A DNA stretch of 64,000 nucleotides, from the IMG/VR virus record IMGVR_UViG_3300042473_001265, positions 62,001 through 126,000 of that record; one strand, written 5' to 3'. The position numbers were made by a program, and so were the translations under genes. Below the pieces are notes generated by a model. The model ran no database searches. It saw only the letters and a list, made by a program, of their open reading frames with translations, and was not told where the DNA came from. Shown here piece after piece: positions 38,604-49,369 of the stretch; within the stretch, counting starts at the first letter, position 1, and each line of letters starts with the position of its first letter.

Positions 38604-38656
38604 AAAATATTTATGGATTATAATTGTTGTTTGATATAAAAGATAAATAAATCATA

Positions 38657-38764
38657 ATGAATACCATTCACTCACTCTTGTCCTCTTTGTGTATCTCGAA
38701 CACAGGGCTATCTGCGTCTTTGAGACTAGAACAGTTCCGGATCCCGAATGGTTGGCACAGTTAA
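38657..38764 (+). CDS. leader peptide 1 (Ser/Leu-rich, 35 aa) of a putative tRNA-operon attenuator
   Basis: MNTIHSLLSSLCISNTGLSASLRLEQFRIPNGWHS: 7 Ser and 6 Leu; followed by a terminator. Confidence 0.7.
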   Translation: MNTIHSLLSSLCISNTGLSASLRLEQFRIPNGWHS

Positions 38765-38791
38765 AATAATTTAACAACCCAAACTTCAAGG

Positions 38792-38820
38792 ACCCTGGAA
38801 CTAAAAACTCCGGGGTTTTT
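38792..38820 (+). terminator. attenuator terminator 1
   Basis: ACCCTGGA-N9-TCCGGGGT plus T run; AGTTCC at 38733 can pair instead with GGAACT at 38797. Confidence 0.75.
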
Positions 38821-38845
38821 CATTATGCACTACAAGGAGAACTGT

Positions 38846-38893
38846 ATGACCGCAGAAGAATATTGGAAATGGTTACATGACAATGTACAATAA
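38846..38893 (+). CDS. 15-aa micropeptide MTAEEYWKWLHDNVQ
   Basis: Strong AAGGAG SD at 38834; first ORF after terminator 1. Confidence 0.45.
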   Translation: MTAEEYWKWLHDNVQ

Positions 38894-38898
38894 AGCAG

Positions 38899-38927
38899 TT
38901 GACACAGATTGCTGACTGTGCTACAAT
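38899..38927 (+). promoter_or_regulatory. sigma70-type promoter of tRNA block 1
   Basis: TTGACA-N17-TACAAT. Confidence 0.75.
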
Positions 38928-38936
38928 AGACAATTG

Positions 38937-38984
38937 GCAACAAACGATCGAGTAGTTGCTGTACAGTTCATTAATATAAAATTT
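38937..38984 (+). promoter_or_regulatory. boxB-like hairpin plus boxA-like antitermination element
   Basis: GCAAC-AAACGATCGAGTA-GTTGC, then GTTCATTAATATAAAATTT; the same loop recurs at 42764. Confidence 0.5.
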
Positions 38985-39005
38985 AGATAAGTTAATACAA
39001 GCAAT

Positions 39006-39095
39006 GGAAGCGTGGCAGAGTCCGGTTTATTGCAGCAGTCTTGAAAACTGCCGGCTCGAAAGGGTCCGTGAGTTCGAATCTCACCGCTTCCACCA
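39006..39095 (+). tRNA. tRNA-Ser(TGA)
   Basis: Cloverleaf with long variable arm, loop CTTGAAA, encoded CCA. Confidence 0.95.
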
Positions 39096-39104
39096 ATGCA
39101 ATTT

Positions 39105-39179
39105 GCGGCCATAGTATAACGGATAATACAGCGGTCTTCTACACCGTGAATGTGGGTTCGATTCCTGCTGGCCGCGCCA
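39105..39179 (+). tRNA. tRNA-Arg(TCT)
   Basis: Loop CTTCTAC, T-loop GGTTCGATTCC, CCA. Confidence 0.93.
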
Positions 39180-39184
39180 AACAT

Positions 39185-39270
39185 GCCCCCATAGACAAAT
39201 TGGTAAAGTCACTCTCCTCAAAAGGGAGTATTTTAAAAAAATCTGAGTTCGAATCTCAGTGGGGGCACCA
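39185..39270 (+). tRNA. tRNA-Leu(CAA)
   Basis: Loop CTCAAAA, AT-rich variable arm, CCA. Confidence 0.9.
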
Positions 39271-39311
39271 ATGGTTGACAAAGATCAACAAACAAGTTAT
39301 AATAGAACAAT

Positions 39312-39398
39312 GCTCTGATGGTGAAATAGGTAGACACAAGAGACTTAAAATCTCTCGCTCGCAAGGGTGTGCCGGTTCGATTCCGGCTCGGAGCACCA
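39312..39398 (+). tRNA. tRNA-Leu(TAA)
   Basis: Loop CTTAAAA, long variable arm, CCA. Confidence 0.95.
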
Positions 39399-39441
39399 TT
39401 TAAATAAGTCAGTTAATCAAGTTAAATTAAAGAAAGCAATC

Positions 39442-39615
39442 ATGACCCCAACAAAAACTTTTAAGTTCAGCAAGCGCAACAAAACATTGATGACCTTGCT
39501 GCCATTCAAAGATCAAACCATACGCAATGCGTTCAAGCGCATGATGGTTGATGCACAGCTATGCAGCGGTGTTGTTGTCAAAAGCAGCAAGGATCGTGGC
39601 ACAGATAGCAAGTAA
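39442..39615 (+). CDS. small basic hypothetical protein within the tRNA block
   Basis: 57-aa ORF MTPTKTFKFSKRNK... between two Leu tRNAs. Confidence 0.55.
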   Translation: MTPTKTFKFSKRNKTLMTLLPFKDQTIRNAFKRMMVDAQLCSGVVVKSSKDRGTDSK

Positions 39616-39623
39616 AGATATAT

Positions 39624-39700
39624 GCCCTGGTGGTGAAATTGGTAGACACAGCGGTCTTAGAAGCCGTAAGCTGAGAGTTCGAGTCTCTCCTAGGGCACCA
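39624..39700 (+). tRNA. tRNA-Leu(TAG)
   Basis: Loop CTTAGAA, short variable arm, CCA. Confidence 0.9.
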
Positions 39701-39722
39701 AGTATATAAAAGCAATCACACT

Positions 39723-40196
39723 ATGCCAAAATGTTATCAACTGATCGGAGTGCCTGCATCGGGCAAAACCACTTGGTACCGTAACCAAGAGTGGTTGGGT
39801 GAAGATAAAAAAGATCACAAGTATGTGTCCACAGATCAGCATGTGGAAGGATATGCCAATGATCAAGGCAAAACCTACAGTGAAGTGTTTGAGGAATACA
39901 TGCCCACTGCTGTCAAACAGATGCTGATAAATGTTAACATGGCTGCGGCATATCAGTTAGATATTGTTTGGGATCAGACCAGCACCACAGTTAAAAGCCG
40001 TCGAAAGAAGTTTGTTGAGTTGCCCAACTATGAGCACATTGCTGTGGTATTTCGGACACCCGATGCACCGGAACATGCTCGCAGATTAAACAGTCGTCCG
40101 GGCAAGCACATTCCTGATGAAATAGTACAAGATATGATCATCAAATTTGAAATGCCTACCGAAGAAGAAGGGTTTGTTGAAATCTGGCATGTGTAA
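39723..40196 (+). CDS. P-loop kinase (AAA_33 / polynucleotide-kinase-like)
   Basis: LIGVPASGKTT and IVWDQTS..R motifs. Confidence 0.85.
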   Translation: MPKCYQLIGVPASGKTTWYRNQEWLGEDKKDHKYVSTDQHVEGYANDQGKTYSEVFEEYMPTAVKQMLINVNMAAAYQLDIVWDQTSTTVKSRRKKFVELPNYEHIAVVFRTPDAPEHARRLNSRPGKHIPDEIVQDMIIKFEMPTEEEGFVEIWHV

Positions 40197-40203
40197 TACT
40201 GGG

Positions 40204-47882: not shown

Positions 47883-47911
47883 TTGACAACATTCTGCAAT
47901 TGTTGTATAAT
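47883..47911 (+). promoter_or_regulatory. internal sigma70-type promoter
   Basis: TTGACA-N17-TATAAT. Confidence 0.75.
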
Positions 47912-47933
47912 CAAAACTTAAACGAAAGACTAT

Positions 47934-47957
47934 ATGAAGCGAACAGCTAAAATGTAG
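47934..47957 (+). CDS. 7-aa mini-leader MKRTAKM upstream of tRNA-Lys
   Basis: AAG and AAA codons; stop abuts a hairpin that can pair alternatively with the 5' end of tRNA-Lys. Confidence 0.4.
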   Translation: MKRTAKM

Positions 47958-48019
47958 TGTCAACCCAGATCCCATGTCGGTCTGGATTGGCACTCGAAAG
48001 ACAATTCACGACTGAGTAT

Positions 48020-48095
48020 GGGATCATAGTGAAATGGTTATCACAGCAGACTTTTAATCTGCCAATTCCCGGTTCGAGTCCGGGTGGTCCTACCA
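48020..48095 (+). tRNA. tRNA-Lys(TTT)
   Basis: Loop CTTTTAA, CCA. Confidence 0.93.
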
Positions 48096-48193
48096 TATAA
48101 AAACACATTAGAAAACATAGGCAGACCTATGGGGTCCTGAGCAGAAACTCAGGAGCGTAGTTTATTGTAAAACAATAGTGTGTTTCTATATGG
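48093..48193 (+). ncRNA. inverted-repeat-bounded RNA cassette
   Basis: CCATATAAAAACACATTA...TAGTGTGTTTCTATATGG; left arm overlaps the CCA of tRNA-Lys. Confidence 0.6.
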
Positions 48194-48244
48194 TAAAACT
48201 ATTTGAGTTCAATGGTCACACGCCCTTGCTTGAATTAGAAGTTG

Positions 48245-48370
48245 CCATAGTTGAATACATTCATCATTGGTTGACCCGACAGTCTGCTTGGTTAGCAGGG
48301 CGGACGCAACGAAGTAGCTTAACTAGCACGATGAAAAAGCCCTTTACGCCGAGAGTGTATTCAACTATGG
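48245..48370 (+). ncRNA. inverted-repeat-bounded RNA cassette
   Basis: CCATAGTTGAATACATTC...GAGTGTATTCAACTATGG. Confidence 0.6.
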
Positions 48371-48479
48371 TCAGTATTGGTAGATCCCGGACCAACTAGG
48401 TTGCTAGTCACAACACATAGGGGATGGGCAATCGCCAAGAAGTCGCAAGAGCAGGCTTGACCGCCAGAGGGTAGCGACG

Positions 48480-48592
48480 CCATATAAGAACACATTCAAC
48501 GGTTAGTGGATACCTAGCAACTGGACGCAGGTGCTATCCCAAAGAGCAGGCATGCCGCCGTAAAGCTAGGAAACGAATGTGTTCTTATATGG
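48480..48592 (+). ncRNA. inverted-repeat-bounded RNA cassette
   Basis: CCATATAAGAACACATTC...GAATGTGTTCTTATATGG, a perfect 18-bp stem. Confidence 0.6.
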
Positions 48593-48598
48593 TCAGAT

Positions 48599-48723
48599 CA
48601 TATAAAAACACACTAGCATAGAGTGACGAGCCCGTTTAGCGGCGGGTGTTATGGGTTGCTCGAATGCCATCCTCGGGCGAGGAGCTAGCAAGGCGGTTCG
48701 ACTCCGTAGTGTGTTTCTATATG
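48599..48723 (+). ncRNA. inverted-repeat-bounded RNA cassette with a T-arm-like hairpin
   Basis: CATATAAAAACACACTA...TAGTGTGTTTCTATATG; internal GCGG-TTCGACT-CCGT; right arm runs into G-1 of tRNA-His. Confidence 0.6.
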
Positions 48724-48799
48724 GTGTAGTTAGTGTCAGCGGTCAGCACTACGGATTGTGATTCCGTCAGCATGGATTCGAATTCCATACTATACCCCA
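48723..48799 (+). tRNA. tRNA-His(GTG)
   Basis: G-1, loop TTGTGAT, C73, CCA. Confidence 0.92.
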
Positions 48800-48809
48800 C
48801 AGCAGTTCT

Positions 48810-48884
48810 GGAAGTATAGCACAGCGGTAGTGCAGCAGCTTCATACGCTGCGGGTCAGTAGTTCGAATCTACTTACTTCCACCA
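48810..48884 (+). tRNA. tRNA-Met(CAT), elongator
   Basis: Loop TTCATAC, paired first base pair, CCA. Confidence 0.8.
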
Positions 48885-48885
48885 C

Positions 48886-48961
48886 ACCAAGATAGCTCAG
48901 TTGGTAGAGCAGCGGATTGAAAATTCGTGTGTGGGCGGTTCGATCCCGTCTCTTGGTACCA
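48886..48961 (+). tRNA. tRNA-Phe(GAA)
   Basis: Loop TTGAAAA, CCA. Confidence 0.92.
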
Positions 48962-48971
48962 GTTAACATAT

Positions 48972-49047
48972 GCGGCTGTAGCTCAGTTGGTAGAGTACTT
49001 GCTTGCCAAGCAAGACGTCACCGGTTCGAACCCGGTTAGCCGCTCCA
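48972..49047 (+). tRNA. tRNA-Gly(GCC)
   Basis: Loop TTGCCAA, U73, CCA. Confidence 0.93.
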
Positions 49048-49053
49048 TTTTTT

Positions 49054-49128
49054 GCATCCTTAGCTCAGGGGTAGAGCGTCTCCCTTACAAGGAGAGGGTC
49101 CGCGGTTCGAAACCGTGAGGATGTACCA
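49054..49128 (+). tRNA. tRNA-Val(TAC)
   Basis: Loop CTTACAA, CCA. Confidence 0.93.
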
Positions 49129-49143
49129 ATTTTAAAGGTGTGT

Positions 49144-49293
49144 ATGAAACTATTTGAAGCAACAGTAAGAGTAAACGGTCGAGAGTTCTTGGACAGGGTT
49201 GGTGCCAACGATGCACAAGAAGCTCGTTTGTTACTGCAACAACGGCATGGACCCAGGGCAGTGCCTTACTTGCCAAAAATGATTCCCAGTTAA
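49144..49293 (+). CDS. 49-aa hypothetical protein within the tRNA block
   Basis: AAAGGTG SD; MKLFEATVRVNGREFLDRVGANDAQEARLLLQQRHG... Confidence 0.5.
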   Translation: MKLFEATVRVNGREFLDRVGANDAQEARLLLQQRHGPRAVPYLPKMIPS

Positions 49294-49295
49294 TT

Positions 49296-49369
49296 CTCAG
49301 TATGGTGAAATGGTATCACTCTTGGTTTGGGACCAAGGAGCGTAGGTTCGATTCCTGCTACTGAGACCA
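49296..49369 (+). tRNA. tRNA-Pro(TGG)
   Basis: Loop TTTGGGA, CCA. Confidence 0.92.

What the first reader, a model, noticed from the sequence alone, without database searches (positions are those of the whole stretch)
38640..49369. Three codon-matched leader-peptide attenuators gate the three tRNA blocks: a possible tRNA-depletion sensor
Seen: each tRNA block is preceded by a short ORF (38657, 42562, 45683), a segment inside that ORF complementary to the 5' arm of a downstream intrinsic terminator, and the terminator itself. Leader content partitions with the tRNA blocks. Leader 1 is Ser/Leu-rich and precedes Ser, Arg, Leu, Leu, Leu. Leader 2 has a Tyr/Glu/Ile(ATA)/Asp cluster and precedes Glu, Tyr, Asp and Ile2/Ile(TAT). 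Leader 3 uses exactly the 15 amino acids whose tRNAs follow it. Established: this is the trp/his/thr attenuator layout, where a stalled ribosome permits antitermination; host anticodon nucleases cleave tRNAs during infection. Inference: the phage uses its own translation to detect missing or cleaved tRNAs and turns on the matching replacement operon. I know of no description of this for phage tRNA arrays. Caveat: extra sigma70 promoters lie downstream of terminators 1 and 2 and inside block 3, so attenuation may add to basal expression rather than control it alone.
Basis: partly seen in the sequence, partly recalled or inferred. Interest (0 to 1): 0.96.

Follow-up and report, generated by a model that had tools for sequence, protein, structure and literature searches.

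The report
Leader-peptide attenuators heading phage tRNA arrays
Three short translated leaders with switchable terminators in this lake jumbo phage belong to a large, apparently undescribed family found in front of phage tRNA gene arrays. The family probably lets the phage match tRNA production to how well ribosomes are supplied with those same tRNAs.

Summary
The three ORF-plus-terminator units are real. They are the three best hits in the window to a covariance model built from 93 related phage sequences. The family has well over 200 loci in IMG/VR. In every locus with enough downstream sequence it lies 176-1198 nt upstream of a same-strand tRNA array. Three features are conserved:
- An ATG ORF of about 30-65 codons is kept in 108 of 109 copies, against 9.8 expected, even though its frame relative to the RNA motif varies.
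- Its stop codon lies in a small hairpin.
- A segment inside the ORF pairs with the 5' arm of an intrinsic terminator, with compensatory changes between subfamilies.

Folding with a ribosome mask predicts read-through when the ribosome is absent or lags, and termination when it has reached the pairing segment. Across 134 leader/array pairs grouped into 11-30 leader types, the last ~12 codons before that segment are enriched for codons read by the first four downstream tRNAs. N-terminal codons and tRNAs #5-16 show no such enrichment.

The attenuator reading is well supported and the codon match is moderately supported. Corrections to the finding:
- Leader 3 uses 17 amino acids, not 15.
- Leader 1 looks degenerate.
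- In this phage, promoters follow every terminator.
- Nothing has been tested experimentally.

The parts
38657..38764 (+). Leader 1 ORF (35 codons, Ser/Leu-rich). Its stop TAA (38762-64) lies in the 5' arm of the small hairpin 38760-38775.
   Evidence: homologue L028 keeps the same ORF
38737..38744 (+). Leader 1 segment 2 (CCGGATCC), a weakened complement of segment 3.
   Evidence: marks two non-canonical pairs; one search gives P(antiterminator) of 0.19 or less at all ribosome positions
38788..38820 (+). Leader 1 segment 3 (GGACCC, 38790-95) and intrinsic terminator with T-tract.
   Evidence: CM hit 38709-38822, 52.2 bits
38899..38927 (+). Strong sigma70-type promoter between terminator 1 and tRNA block 1 (TTGACA-17-TACAAT with TG).
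   Evidence: repeat family D5
42528..42556 (+). Promoter of leader 2 (TTGACT-17-TATAAT). The ATG lies 5 nt after the -10 hexamer, so the transcript would be leaderless.
   Evidence: the same spacing occurs in all L2-type homologues
42562..42660 (+). Leader 2 ORF (32 codons). Codons 16-21 (42607-42624) are Tyr-Glu-Ile(ATA)-Ala-Tyr-Glu. The stop lies in the loop side of hairpin 42652-42673.
42638..42647 (+). Leader 2 segment 2 (GGGGTCTTTG), complementary to 42678-42686.
   Evidence: MFE structure; compensatory relative to the main family (GGGTCC/GGACCC becomes GGGTCT/AGACCC)
42678..42707 (+). Leader 2 segment 3 (CAAAGACCC) overlapping the intrinsic terminator (ACCCGC / GCGGGT plus T7).
   Evidence: CM hit 42604-42707 at 17.1 bits; weak Rfam Trp_leader match at 28.6 bits, below the 41-bit cut-off
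42718..42746 (+). Promoter directly after terminator 2. A -35-like element at this spot is conserved in L2-type homologues.
45647..45675 (+). Promoter of leader 3 (TTGACA-17-TACAAT). The ATG lies 7 nt after the -10 hexamer.
45683..45814 (+). Leader 3 ORF (43 codons). The stop TAA at 45812-14 lies in the middle hairpin (about 45803-45823).
45785..45797 (+). Leader 3 segment 2 (A-GGGTCC) plus GAAG. It pairs with CTTC-AA-GGACCC-T at 45832-45844 to form the antiterminator.
45836..45868 (+). Leader 3 intrinsic terminator (CCCTGG / CCAGGG plus T7).
45885..46055 (+). Small protein gene with a good Shine-Dalgarno sequence right after terminator 3. The same gene follows the terminator in at least 65 of 127 homologous loci.
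   Evidence: phrog_20536-like, unknown function
46066..46255 (+). Conserved structured RNA that lies between leader and first tRNA in relatives.
   Evidence: covarying helices read by eye; more than 120 loci hold its long helix; no Rfam match

Best explanation
Each unit is a ribosome-dependent transcription attenuator at the head of a phage tRNA operon.

**Proposed mechanism**
- A sigma70-type promoter starts a transcript that begins at, or a few bases before, the ATG of a 30-50-codon leader ORF.
- Near the 3' end of the ORF lies segment 2 (GGGUCC or a variant).
- The stop codon follows 6-10 codons later, inside a small hairpin.
- Next comes segment 3 (GGACCC or the matching variant), which can pair with segment 2 to form an antiterminator.
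- Alternatively segment 3 pairs with segment 4 to form an intrinsic terminator.
- If the ribosome has reached the region around segment 2 when RNA polymerase makes segments 3 and 4, segment 2 is masked. The terminator then forms and the transcript ends.
- If the ribosome is absent, or held up at earlier codons, segments 2 and 3 pair. Transcription then continues into a small conserved protein gene, a structured RNA and the tRNA array.
- The codons just upstream of segment 2 are biased towards those read by the first tRNAs of the array. A shortage of those tRNAs would therefore raise their own transcription, which is product feedback.

**What is shown and what is inferred**
- Shown: the conserved anatomy, the covariation, the position before tRNA arrays and the codon/tRNA association.
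- Inferred: translation of the ORF, the switch itself and the physiological signal.

**In this window**
- L3 and L2 look functional.
- L1 looks like a decayed copy.
- All three tRNA blocks also have their own promoters, so the attenuators would modulate expression rather than gate it.
For: **Family and position**
- 114 of 127 copies have a same-strand tRNA array 176-1198 nt downstream (median 417). The other 13 lack downstream sequence.
- In a sample drawn through the downstream structured RNA, and so blind to the leader, 60 of 63 testable loci carry a leader ORF plus terminator.

**ORF**
- 108 of 109 copies keep an ATG ORF of at least 32 codons that runs through segment 2 and stops before segment 3. 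Dinucleotide shuffles predict 9.8.
- The frame relative to GGGTCC differs (60, 43 and 6 copies), yet the stop codon stays 22-31 nt before AAGGACCC.
- The -10-to-ATG spacing is invariant in L2-type leaders.

**RNA structure**
- Terminator inner pairs are 113/113 canonical, with several pair types.
- The pair flanking GGGTCC/GGACCC is AU 62, GC 31, GU 11 and other 9. This exceeds all 1000 shuffles.
- Subfamilies show compensating variants: GGGTTC/GAACCC, GGGTCT/AGACCC, GTCCAGG/CCTGGAC and CCCGGGG/CCCCTGGG.

**Switch**
- With a ribosome mask on 40 members, P(antiterminator) is 0.80 with no ribosome.
- It is 0.71-0.83 with the P-site at least 7 codons upstream of segment 2.
- P(terminator) is about 1.0 with the P-site from -5 to +5.
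- L3 and L2 behave the same way.

**Codon/tRNA match**
- For the last 12 codons against the first 4 tRNAs, the match is 0.317 against 0.203 permuted over 11 leader types (p<2e-5). 10 of 11 types score higher on their own array than on others.
- The same holds at codon level.
- It holds when the window's own three leader types are left out (exact p 0.0002-0.002).
- It holds with objective clustering of 134 pairs (p 4e-4 to <1e-4 at 17-23 clusters).
- It is absent for N-terminal codons and for tRNAs #5-16.
- All L2-type leaders keep AYE[SRH]D before segment 2 and are followed by Glu, Tyr and Asp tRNAs.
Against: - There are no expression, Term-seq or ribosome data. Metatranscriptome contigs do not cover the leaders.
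- The ORFs lack Shine-Dalgarno sequences, and leaderless or A-rich initiation is assumed.
- Codon-position entropies (1.21, 1.07, 1.26) give only a weak coding signature.
- The stretch GATCGCACACCAGAG is conserved at the nucleotide level, which the model does not explain.
- The linker AAACTYCAA is also unexplained.
- The main (DRTPE) subfamily keeps nearly the same leader in front of very different tRNA orders.
- The codon enrichment is as strong in codons -1 to -5 as in -6 to -11. In the simple model, stalling at -1 to -5 should terminate.
- For L3 the equilibrium model predicts antitermination again when the ribosome sits on the stop codon.
- In the window, promoters lie between every terminator and its tRNAs.
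- L1 is predicted to terminate always.
- The folding model is an equilibrium model, not a kinetic one.
Confidence: 0.55

Rival explanations
1. The units are translation-coupled attenuators that sense general translation capacity. The signal would be ribosome availability, initiation on leaderless mRNA, or any slowdown. The identity of the leader codons would not matter, and the codon/tRNA association would be a by-product.
For: - The main subfamily keeps one leader in front of many different tRNA orders.
- The predicted default without a ribosome is read-through.
- No runs of one codon occur, unlike classical attenuators.
- The effect size of the association is modest, about one extra matching codon in twelve.
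Against: - The association is significant at every clustering level.
- It is confined to the codons near segment 2 and to the first four tRNAs.
- L2-type leaders pair conserved Tyr/Glu/Asp codons with Glu-Tyr-Asp tRNAs in all loci.
Confidence: 0.2
2. The ORFs are ordinary small-protein genes with their own terminators. They simply sit upstream of tRNA arrays by synteny, the peptide is the functional product, and there is no switch.
For: - The peptide has conserved residues: Trp 96%, Asp 92%, Arg 95%, Gly 86%.
- Third-position variation is seen at Gly, Arg and Pro codons.
- In the window, promoters follow the terminators.
Against: - Segment 2 is conserved as nucleotides in three different reading frames.
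- Segment 2 and segment 3 covary within and between subfamilies.
- The stop codon is fixed relative to the RNA structure.
- Overall codon-position entropies are nearly flat.
- There is no match in Pfam or PHROGs.
Confidence: 0.1
3. The element is a ligand-, protein- or tRNA-binding RNA switch, or a small RNA. Its P1-P2 fold is the sensor and the ORF is incidental or secondary.
For: - The linker AAACTYCAA and the stretch GATCGCACACCAGAG are conserved beyond what pairing or coding requires.
- The terminated transcript of 150-190 nt would be a stable, structured RNA.
Against: - The ORF is kept in 108 of 109 copies against 9.8 expected, in varying frames.
- ATG placement at the transcription start is conserved.
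- No Rfam family matches, including T-box.
Confidence: 0.08
4. The leader encodes an arrest peptide, working like SecM or TnaC. The nascent chain (conserved F/V-M-P-x-x-W ... D-R-T-P-E) would stall the ribosome in response to a factor.
For: - Trp, Asp, Arg and Pro residues are conserved in the main subfamily.
- There is a resemblance, recalled from memory and not tested, to FxxxxWIxxxxGIRAGP of SecM and to W12/D16/P24 of TnaC.
Against: - The Trp-to-Pro spacing varies from 11 to 14 or more residues.
- Other subfamilies (L2, W3, L035, L086 types) lack the motif yet keep the architecture.
Confidence: 0.07

Closest known systems
Leader-peptide transcription attenuators of amino-acid operons (trp, his, leu, thr, ilv, pheA) of Proteobacteria
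   Same: - A short ORF lies in the leader.
- An intrinsic terminator lies before the regulated genes.
- An antiterminator's 5' strand lies in or next to the ORF.
- Ribosome position decides which structure forms.
   Different: - The regulated genes are tRNA genes (plus a small protein and a structured RNA), not biosynthetic enzymes.
- There are no runs of one regulatory codon. Instead there is a mixed set of codons biased to the first tRNAs downstream.
- No clear 1:2 pause or anti-antiterminator hairpin is present. The predicted default without translation is read-through, not termination.
- Many copies are leaderless.
- There is no sequence homology. The Rfam Trp_leader match to L2 scores 28.6 bits, below the 41-bit cut-off.
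pheST (pheM leader) attenuator and T-box riboswitches, which tie expression of translation components to tRNA status
   Same: Expression of a component of the decoding machinery would be tied to the supply of the matching (charged) tRNA.
   Different: - pheM controls a synthetase gene and uses a run of Phe codons.
- T-boxes bind uncharged tRNA directly, without a ribosome, and occur mainly in Firmicutes.
- No T-box match was found here.
- Here the product of the regulated gene would itself be the sensed molecule.
Translation-coupled terminator control such as pyrBI, and dual-function attenuator RNA/peptide such as rnTrpL/peTrpL of Sinorhizobium (PMC7968998)
   Same: - Coupling between the leading ribosome and RNA polymerase sets termination.
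- The terminated leader could also act as a small RNA or a peptide.
   Different: - In pyrBI the ORF runs through the terminator and a close ribosome prevents termination. Here the ORF stops 30-40 nt before the terminator stem and a ribosome near segment 2 is predicted to favour termination.
- No trans target is known.

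Membership tests
Ribosome-mediated (leader-peptide) transcription attenuator | A short ORF in the leader transcript that is conserved as an ORF | tested here: met
   108 of 109 copies against 9.8 expected. The frame varies relative to the RNA motif. L2-type ORFs are kept in all loci.
Ribosome-mediated (leader-peptide) transcription attenuator | An intrinsic terminator between the leader ORF and the regulated genes | tested here: met
   Hairpin plus T-tract is present in all copies. Inner pairs are 113/113 canonical with covariation. tRNA arrays lie 176-1198 nt downstream.
Ribosome-mediated (leader-peptide) transcription attenuator | An antiterminator mutually exclusive with the terminator, with its 5' strand inside or next to the ORF | tested here: met
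   The flanking pair covaries: AU 62, GC 31, GU 11. Compensating variants occur between subfamilies. L1 of the window is weak.
Ribosome-mediated (leader-peptide) transcription attenuator | Regulatory codons cognate to the regulated product, placed so that stalling frees the antiterminator | tested here: inconclusive
   Enrichment is significant but modest: 0.317 against 0.203, with negative controls. There are no codon runs, no tracking inside the main subfamily, and equal enrichment in codons -1 to -5.
Ribosome-mediated (leader-peptide) transcription attenuator | An upstream 1:2 hairpin (pause or anti-antiterminator) that gives termination when the leader is not translated | tested here: not met
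   The equilibrium model gives the antiterminator at 0.80 without a ribosome. A local hairpin of segment 2 with the following GGAC(C) exists in many copies but was not tested statistically.
Ribosome-mediated (leader-peptide) transcription attenuator | Read-through depends on translation of the leader (experimental) | not testable with these tools
   Metatranscriptome contigs do not cover the leaders. No cultured phage carries the element.
Rfam Trp_leader (RF00513) | Score at or above the family's gathering threshold | tested here: not met
   L2 (42625-42709) scores 28.6 bits against 41. L1 and L3 have no match.
T-box riboswitch, or any other Rfam cis-regulatory family | A covariance-model match | tested here: not met
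   No match at E up to 1 in 38000-50500 apart from the weak Trp_leader hit. None appears at gathering thresholds in the window or in 14 related loci.
Arrest peptides (SecM / TnaC type) | A conserved arrest motif with fixed spacing to the stall site | tested here: inconclusive
   Conserved W...DRTPE occurs in one subfamily only, and its spacing varies from 11 to 14 or more residues. The resemblance to SecM/TnaC is recalled from memory, not tested.

The most novel reading that the evidence does not exclude
Phage tRNA arrays are under product feedback. A leaderless leader peptide carries control codons that are read by the first tRNAs of the array. When those tRNAs are scarce, the ribosome lags and the antiterminator forms. 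Scarcity could come from a mismatch with host codon usage, host shut-off, or cleavage by anticodon nucleases. The phage then transcribes the replacement tRNAs, and the supply shuts itself off once it is restored. This would be the first attenuator known to control tRNA genes, and a built-in sensor of tRNA-targeting defence. It would be widespread in freshwater jumbo phages.
Probability: 0.4. Interest if true: 0.95.

Novelty: new variant of a known kind. Interest (0 to 1): 0.87.

Why it matters
How phages regulate their tRNA genes is essentially unknown. tRNA genes are assumed to be controlled only at promoters.

A translated leader that reads out the supply of the very tRNAs it controls would be a new use of attenuation. 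It would explain how large phages avoid over- or under-producing tRNAs. It would also give a direct, testable link between phage tRNA arrays and host tRNA-depleting defences.

The family is large and highly conserved. It has simple, mutable parts: a start codon, control codons and two pairing segments. The idea can therefore be tested with reporter fusions and in-vitro coupled transcription-translation.

The same loci also hold an undescribed conserved structured RNA and a conserved small protein next to GOLLD RNA and tmRNA. This marks a dense, poorly understood 'translation island' in lake jumbo phages.

Tried and rejected
- **Close relatives in GenBank phages.** A megablast of 38500-46000 found only tRNA-sized hits. 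A blastn search with a full main-type leader found nothing. No cultured phage carries the element.
- **Known families.** Pfam and PHROGs gave no match for the leader peptides. Rfam gave none apart from a sub-threshold Trp_leader hit on L2.
- **Locus-level permutation of leader against tRNA set.** The difference was tiny (0.371 against 0.353). The test was dominated by one subfamily and confounded by relatedness, so I replaced it with cluster-level tests.
- **Main subfamily composition.** Correlating control-region enrichment with tRNA frequency gave rho 0.35, p 0.13, which is not significant.
- **Metatranscriptomes.** Four RNA runs laid on 42400-48399 cover the GOLLD region massively but not the leaders. 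They are uninformative for termination.
- **Bacterial and archaeal genomes.** A scan of 185,579 species genomes gave 17 pattern hits. Only two are real by the covariance model, and both lie on short MAG contigs (Polynucleobacter, Flavobacteriales). The element is therefore phage-borne.
- **'Promoters' after the terminator in relatives.** I first read AGTGTGTATAGG... as a promoter. It is better explained as the 5' strand of a conserved structured RNA. In the window, true consensus promoters overlap its remnants.
- **ORF 46064-46225.** I first took this for a gene. It overlaps that structured RNA.
- **Extension of the antiterminator beyond one flanking pair.** This is not supported, because positions 2-4 are at shuffle level.
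- **Literature.** Six full-text searches, including the conserved sequence strings, found no description.

Full report
**What is in the window.**
- The window carries 30 tRNA genes, a permuted beta-type tmRNA and a GOLLD RNA between 39006 and 49767.
- Composition is uniform.
- Identical stretches occur in IMG/VR contigs of 340 kb and 107 kb. DNA runs from lake water hold it. It is therefore a freshwater jumbo phage, with no close relative among GenBank phages.
- Each is followed by a hairpin with a T-tract, and each contains a stretch complementary to the 5' arm of that hairpin.
- None has a Shine-Dalgarno sequence.
- For L2 and L3 the ATG lies 5-7 nt after the -10 hexamer of a good sigma70-type promoter. 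The RNA would therefore start at or next to the ATG.

**The units are members of a large family.**
- L1 and L3 share a 50-nt 3' part.
These gave 113 distinct sequences.
- A covariance model built from 93 of them finds exactly one copy per locus.
- In the window its three best + strand hits are L3 (64.3 bits), L1 (52.2 bits, E 5e-11; not in the seed) and L2 (17.1 bits, E 0.056).
- L2 has its own subfamily of about 18 loci, found with its terminator sequence.
- Among 185,579 species genomes only two short MAG contigs hold the element.
- Rfam, Pfam and PHROGs have nothing for it.
- Six literature searches found no description.

**Position.**
- In 114 of 127 copies a tRNA array follows on the same strand, 176-1198 nt downstream (median 417).
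- The 13 exceptions run out of sequence.
- Between terminator and first tRNA lie two further elements. One is a conserved 50-60-aa protein gene with a good ribosome-binding site, present in at least 65 of 127 loci and phrog_20536-like. The other is a conserved structured RNA of 170-300 nt.
- I used the long helix of that RNA as a query that is blind to the leader. This gave 87 new loci. Of 63 with enough upstream sequence, 60 carry a leader ORF plus terminator.

**The ORF is kept as an ORF.**
- 108 of 109 copies have an ATG ORF of at least 32 codons that runs through segment 2 and stops before segment 3. Dinucleotide-preserving shuffles predict 9.8.
- The reading frame relative to GGGTCC differs among copies (60, 43 and 6). 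Even so, the stop codon always lies 22-31 nt before AAGGACCC, in the 5' arm or loop of a small covarying hairpin.
- L2-type leaders keep TTGACT-17-TATA(A/C)T-ACACT-ATG without change. This argues for a leaderless mRNA.
- Peptide conservation is patchy. In the main subfamily Trp, Asp, Arg, Gly, Pro and Glu are conserved, but codon-position entropies are nearly flat at 1.21, 1.07 and 1.26.
- What seems to be selected is therefore mostly that the frame is open and where it ends.

**The RNA switch.**
- The three inner pairs of the terminator are canonical in 113 of 113 sequences, with three to five pair types each.
- The antiterminator core GGGUCC:GGACCC was fixed by my search pattern and is uninformative.
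- The flanking pair was not fixed by the pattern. It is AU 62, GC 31, GU 11 and other 9, which is above all 1000 shuffles.
- Further outward positions do not pair.
- A second short helix (GRAG with CUYC) is fully complementary in about 70 of 113 copies.
- Between subfamilies the two strands change together: GGGTCC/GGACCC, GGGTTC/GAACCC, GGGTCT/AGACCC (which includes L2 of the window), GTCCAGG/CCTGGAC and CCCGGGG/CCCCTGGG.

**Predicted logic.**
- I folded 40 members with a 28-nt ribosome footprint forced single-stranded at each P-site position.
- Without a ribosome the antiterminator dominates (0.80).
- It still dominates (0.71-0.83) when the P-site is 7 or more codons upstream of segment 2.
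- From 5 codons upstream to 5 codons downstream the terminator forms with probability about 1.
- With the stop codon in the A-site, the terminator probability is 0.72.
- The window's L3 and L2 behave as sharp switches. In L2 the last permissive P-site codons are 16-21, which are Tyr-Glu-Ile(AUA)-Ala-Tyr-Glu.
- L1 is predicted to terminate at every position, so it looks like a decayed copy.
- This differs from trp. A leader that is not translated reads through.
- The model is an equilibrium one and ignores sterics and kinetics.

**Do leader codons match the tRNAs?**
  - L3 has 39 of 42 residues in the block-3 set. It uses 17 amino acids, with P about 7e-4.
  - L1 is Ser/Leu/Arg-rich (8 of 237 small ORFs are as rich).
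  - L2 is enriched in block-2 amino acids (7 of 237).
- Across the family a locus-level permutation shows almost nothing (0.371 against 0.353). One subfamily with a nearly constant leader dominates that test.
- Treating leader types as the units gives a different picture.
  - For the last 12 codons before segment 2 against the first four tRNAs, the own-array match is 0.317 against 0.203 permuted over 11 types (p<2e-5). 10 of 11 types score higher on their own array.
  - Strict wobble at codon level gives 0.244 against 0.157.
  - Leaving out the window's own three types gives exact p of 0.0002-0.002 for the tightest windows, rising to 0.08-0.14 for wide ones.
  - With 134 pairs and objective clustering, p is 0.001-0.04 at 11 clusters, 4e-4 to 5e-3 at 17, and <1e-4 at 23.
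- Two internal controls are negative.
  - Codons more than 23 positions upstream show no enrichment.
  - tRNAs #5-8, #9-12 and #13-16 show none.
- Illustrations:
  - All L2-type leaders have AYE[SRH]D and precede Glu-Tyr-Asp.
  - L035-type leaders read W-S-H-A-N-G-R-V-N-S-I before Trp-Ala-Ser-Asn-Thr-Ile-Lys-His. A relative with Tyr in place of that Asn precedes an array with an added tRNA-Tyr.
- The effect is about one extra matching codon in twelve.
- The main subfamily does not track within itself.
- The enrichment is as strong in codons -1 to -5 as in -6 to -11, which the simple model does not predict.

**What this means for the window.**
- L3 is a typical member. In relatives it sits about 200 nt before Ala/Trp-Gln-Ile-Ser-Asn-Thr.
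- Here L3 is followed by the small protein gene (45885-46055), the structured RNA (46066-46255), an inserted minus-strand gene (46270-46980) and a promoter (46974-47001) before tRNA-Trp.
- L2 is followed directly by a promoter (42718-42746). Its -35 element is conserved in relatives.
- L1 is followed by a 15-codon ORF remnant and a near-consensus promoter (38899-38927).
- In this phage the attenuators can therefore add to tRNA transcription but cannot control it alone.

**Verdict.**
- The attenuator reading is well supported by comparative evidence.
- The codon-matching idea has moderate, independent statistical support.
- The link to tRNA depletion or cleavage remains an inference.
- The mechanism class is known. 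A leader-peptide attenuator in front of tRNA genes, widespread in phages, appears to be new.

Noticed in passing
window 44600-45472 (Rfam match 45008-45472): GOLLD RNA scores 197 bits and has tRNA-Asn (45071-45145) embedded in it. Freshwater metatranscriptome contigs cover 44600-45400 at word depths up to about 2e5, which suggests the RNA starts about 400 nt upstream of the Rfam match. A second copy lies in related locus L024 (2987-3452).
   Followed up: partly
window 46066-46255; partial copies about 38918-38960 and 42737-42970; many loci (e.g. L098, L051, L035): A conserved structured RNA of 170-300 nt lies between the leader terminator and the first tRNA. It has a hairpin with loop AACG(A/C)G(G)A, the stretch GGGCGGCC..GGATG, a long covarying helix GTATTAAAGCA.../...TGCTTTAATAC, and a terminal hairpin ACACAC../..GTGTGT. 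It has no Rfam match, and more than 120 IMG/VR loci hold the long helix.
   Followed up: partly
window 45885-46055; 65 or more related loci: A conserved small protein (50-60 aa, motif HTLT.EQ..KLI..K.ERA) with a strong ribosome-binding site lies 17-20 nt after the leader terminator. It is a weak match to phrog_20536 (unknown function). L1 is followed by a 15-codon remnant (38846-38893).
   Followed up: partly
window 49393-49676 (ARAGORN 49362-49767): A permuted (two-piece) tmRNA of the betaproteobacterial type lies directly after tRNA-Pro. Related loci L005, L027 and L029 carry one too. This hints at a betaproteobacterial host, and one related contig is binned with a Polynucleobacter MAG (L225).
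   Followed up: partly
window 45553-45629 and 47721-47788: A tRNA-like sequence with a T-arm, acceptor 3' strand and CCA (a possible CAU anticodon, read by eye) lies just upstream of the L3 promoter. Neither ARAGORN nor Rfam calls it. A weak Rfam tRNA hit (32 bits) at 47721-47788 is also missed by ARAGORN.
   Followed up: no
window 38898, 42717, 44378, 45646, 47414 (32-nt repeat family D5): A recurrent promoter consensus, GTTGACAC-N14-(TG)CTAYAATAG, recurs through the tRNA region. It is probably the phage's early or host-RNAP promoter type. 34 promoter-like sites were found in 37000-51000, against 22.5 expected.
   Followed up: no
window 42849-42889 and 42906-42946; L142: Two tandem 41-nt repeats (TTCA.CTGAATTGACAG...GGGGAGCCG) are inserted in the structured RNA before tRNA-Glu. 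The same pair is inserted in the equivalent RNA of locus L142.
   Followed up: no
window 48176, 48575, 48707 (19-nt repeats) and 48085/48590: Short direct repeats (TAGTGTGTTTCTATATGGT and a 27-nt family) flank the gap between tRNA-Lys and tRNA-His. Their meaning is unknown.
   Followed up: no
window 42407-42494 and 44247-44336: Two unusual tRNAs occur: tRNA-Ser with anticodon ACT, and a long tRNA-Ile with anticodon TAT (AUA reader). The latter also gives a weak tRNA-Sec-like Rfam hit. A CAT tRNA at 43456 may be Ile2 rather than Met.
   Followed up: no
window 49835-50077 and 50186-51088: An Ala/Pro/Lys-rich repeat protein with a signal-like N-terminus is followed by a 300-aa ORF that reads like a Gram-negative porin. 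Both calls are from the translation only and no search was run. They are unexpected neighbours of a tRNA island in a phage.
   Followed up: no
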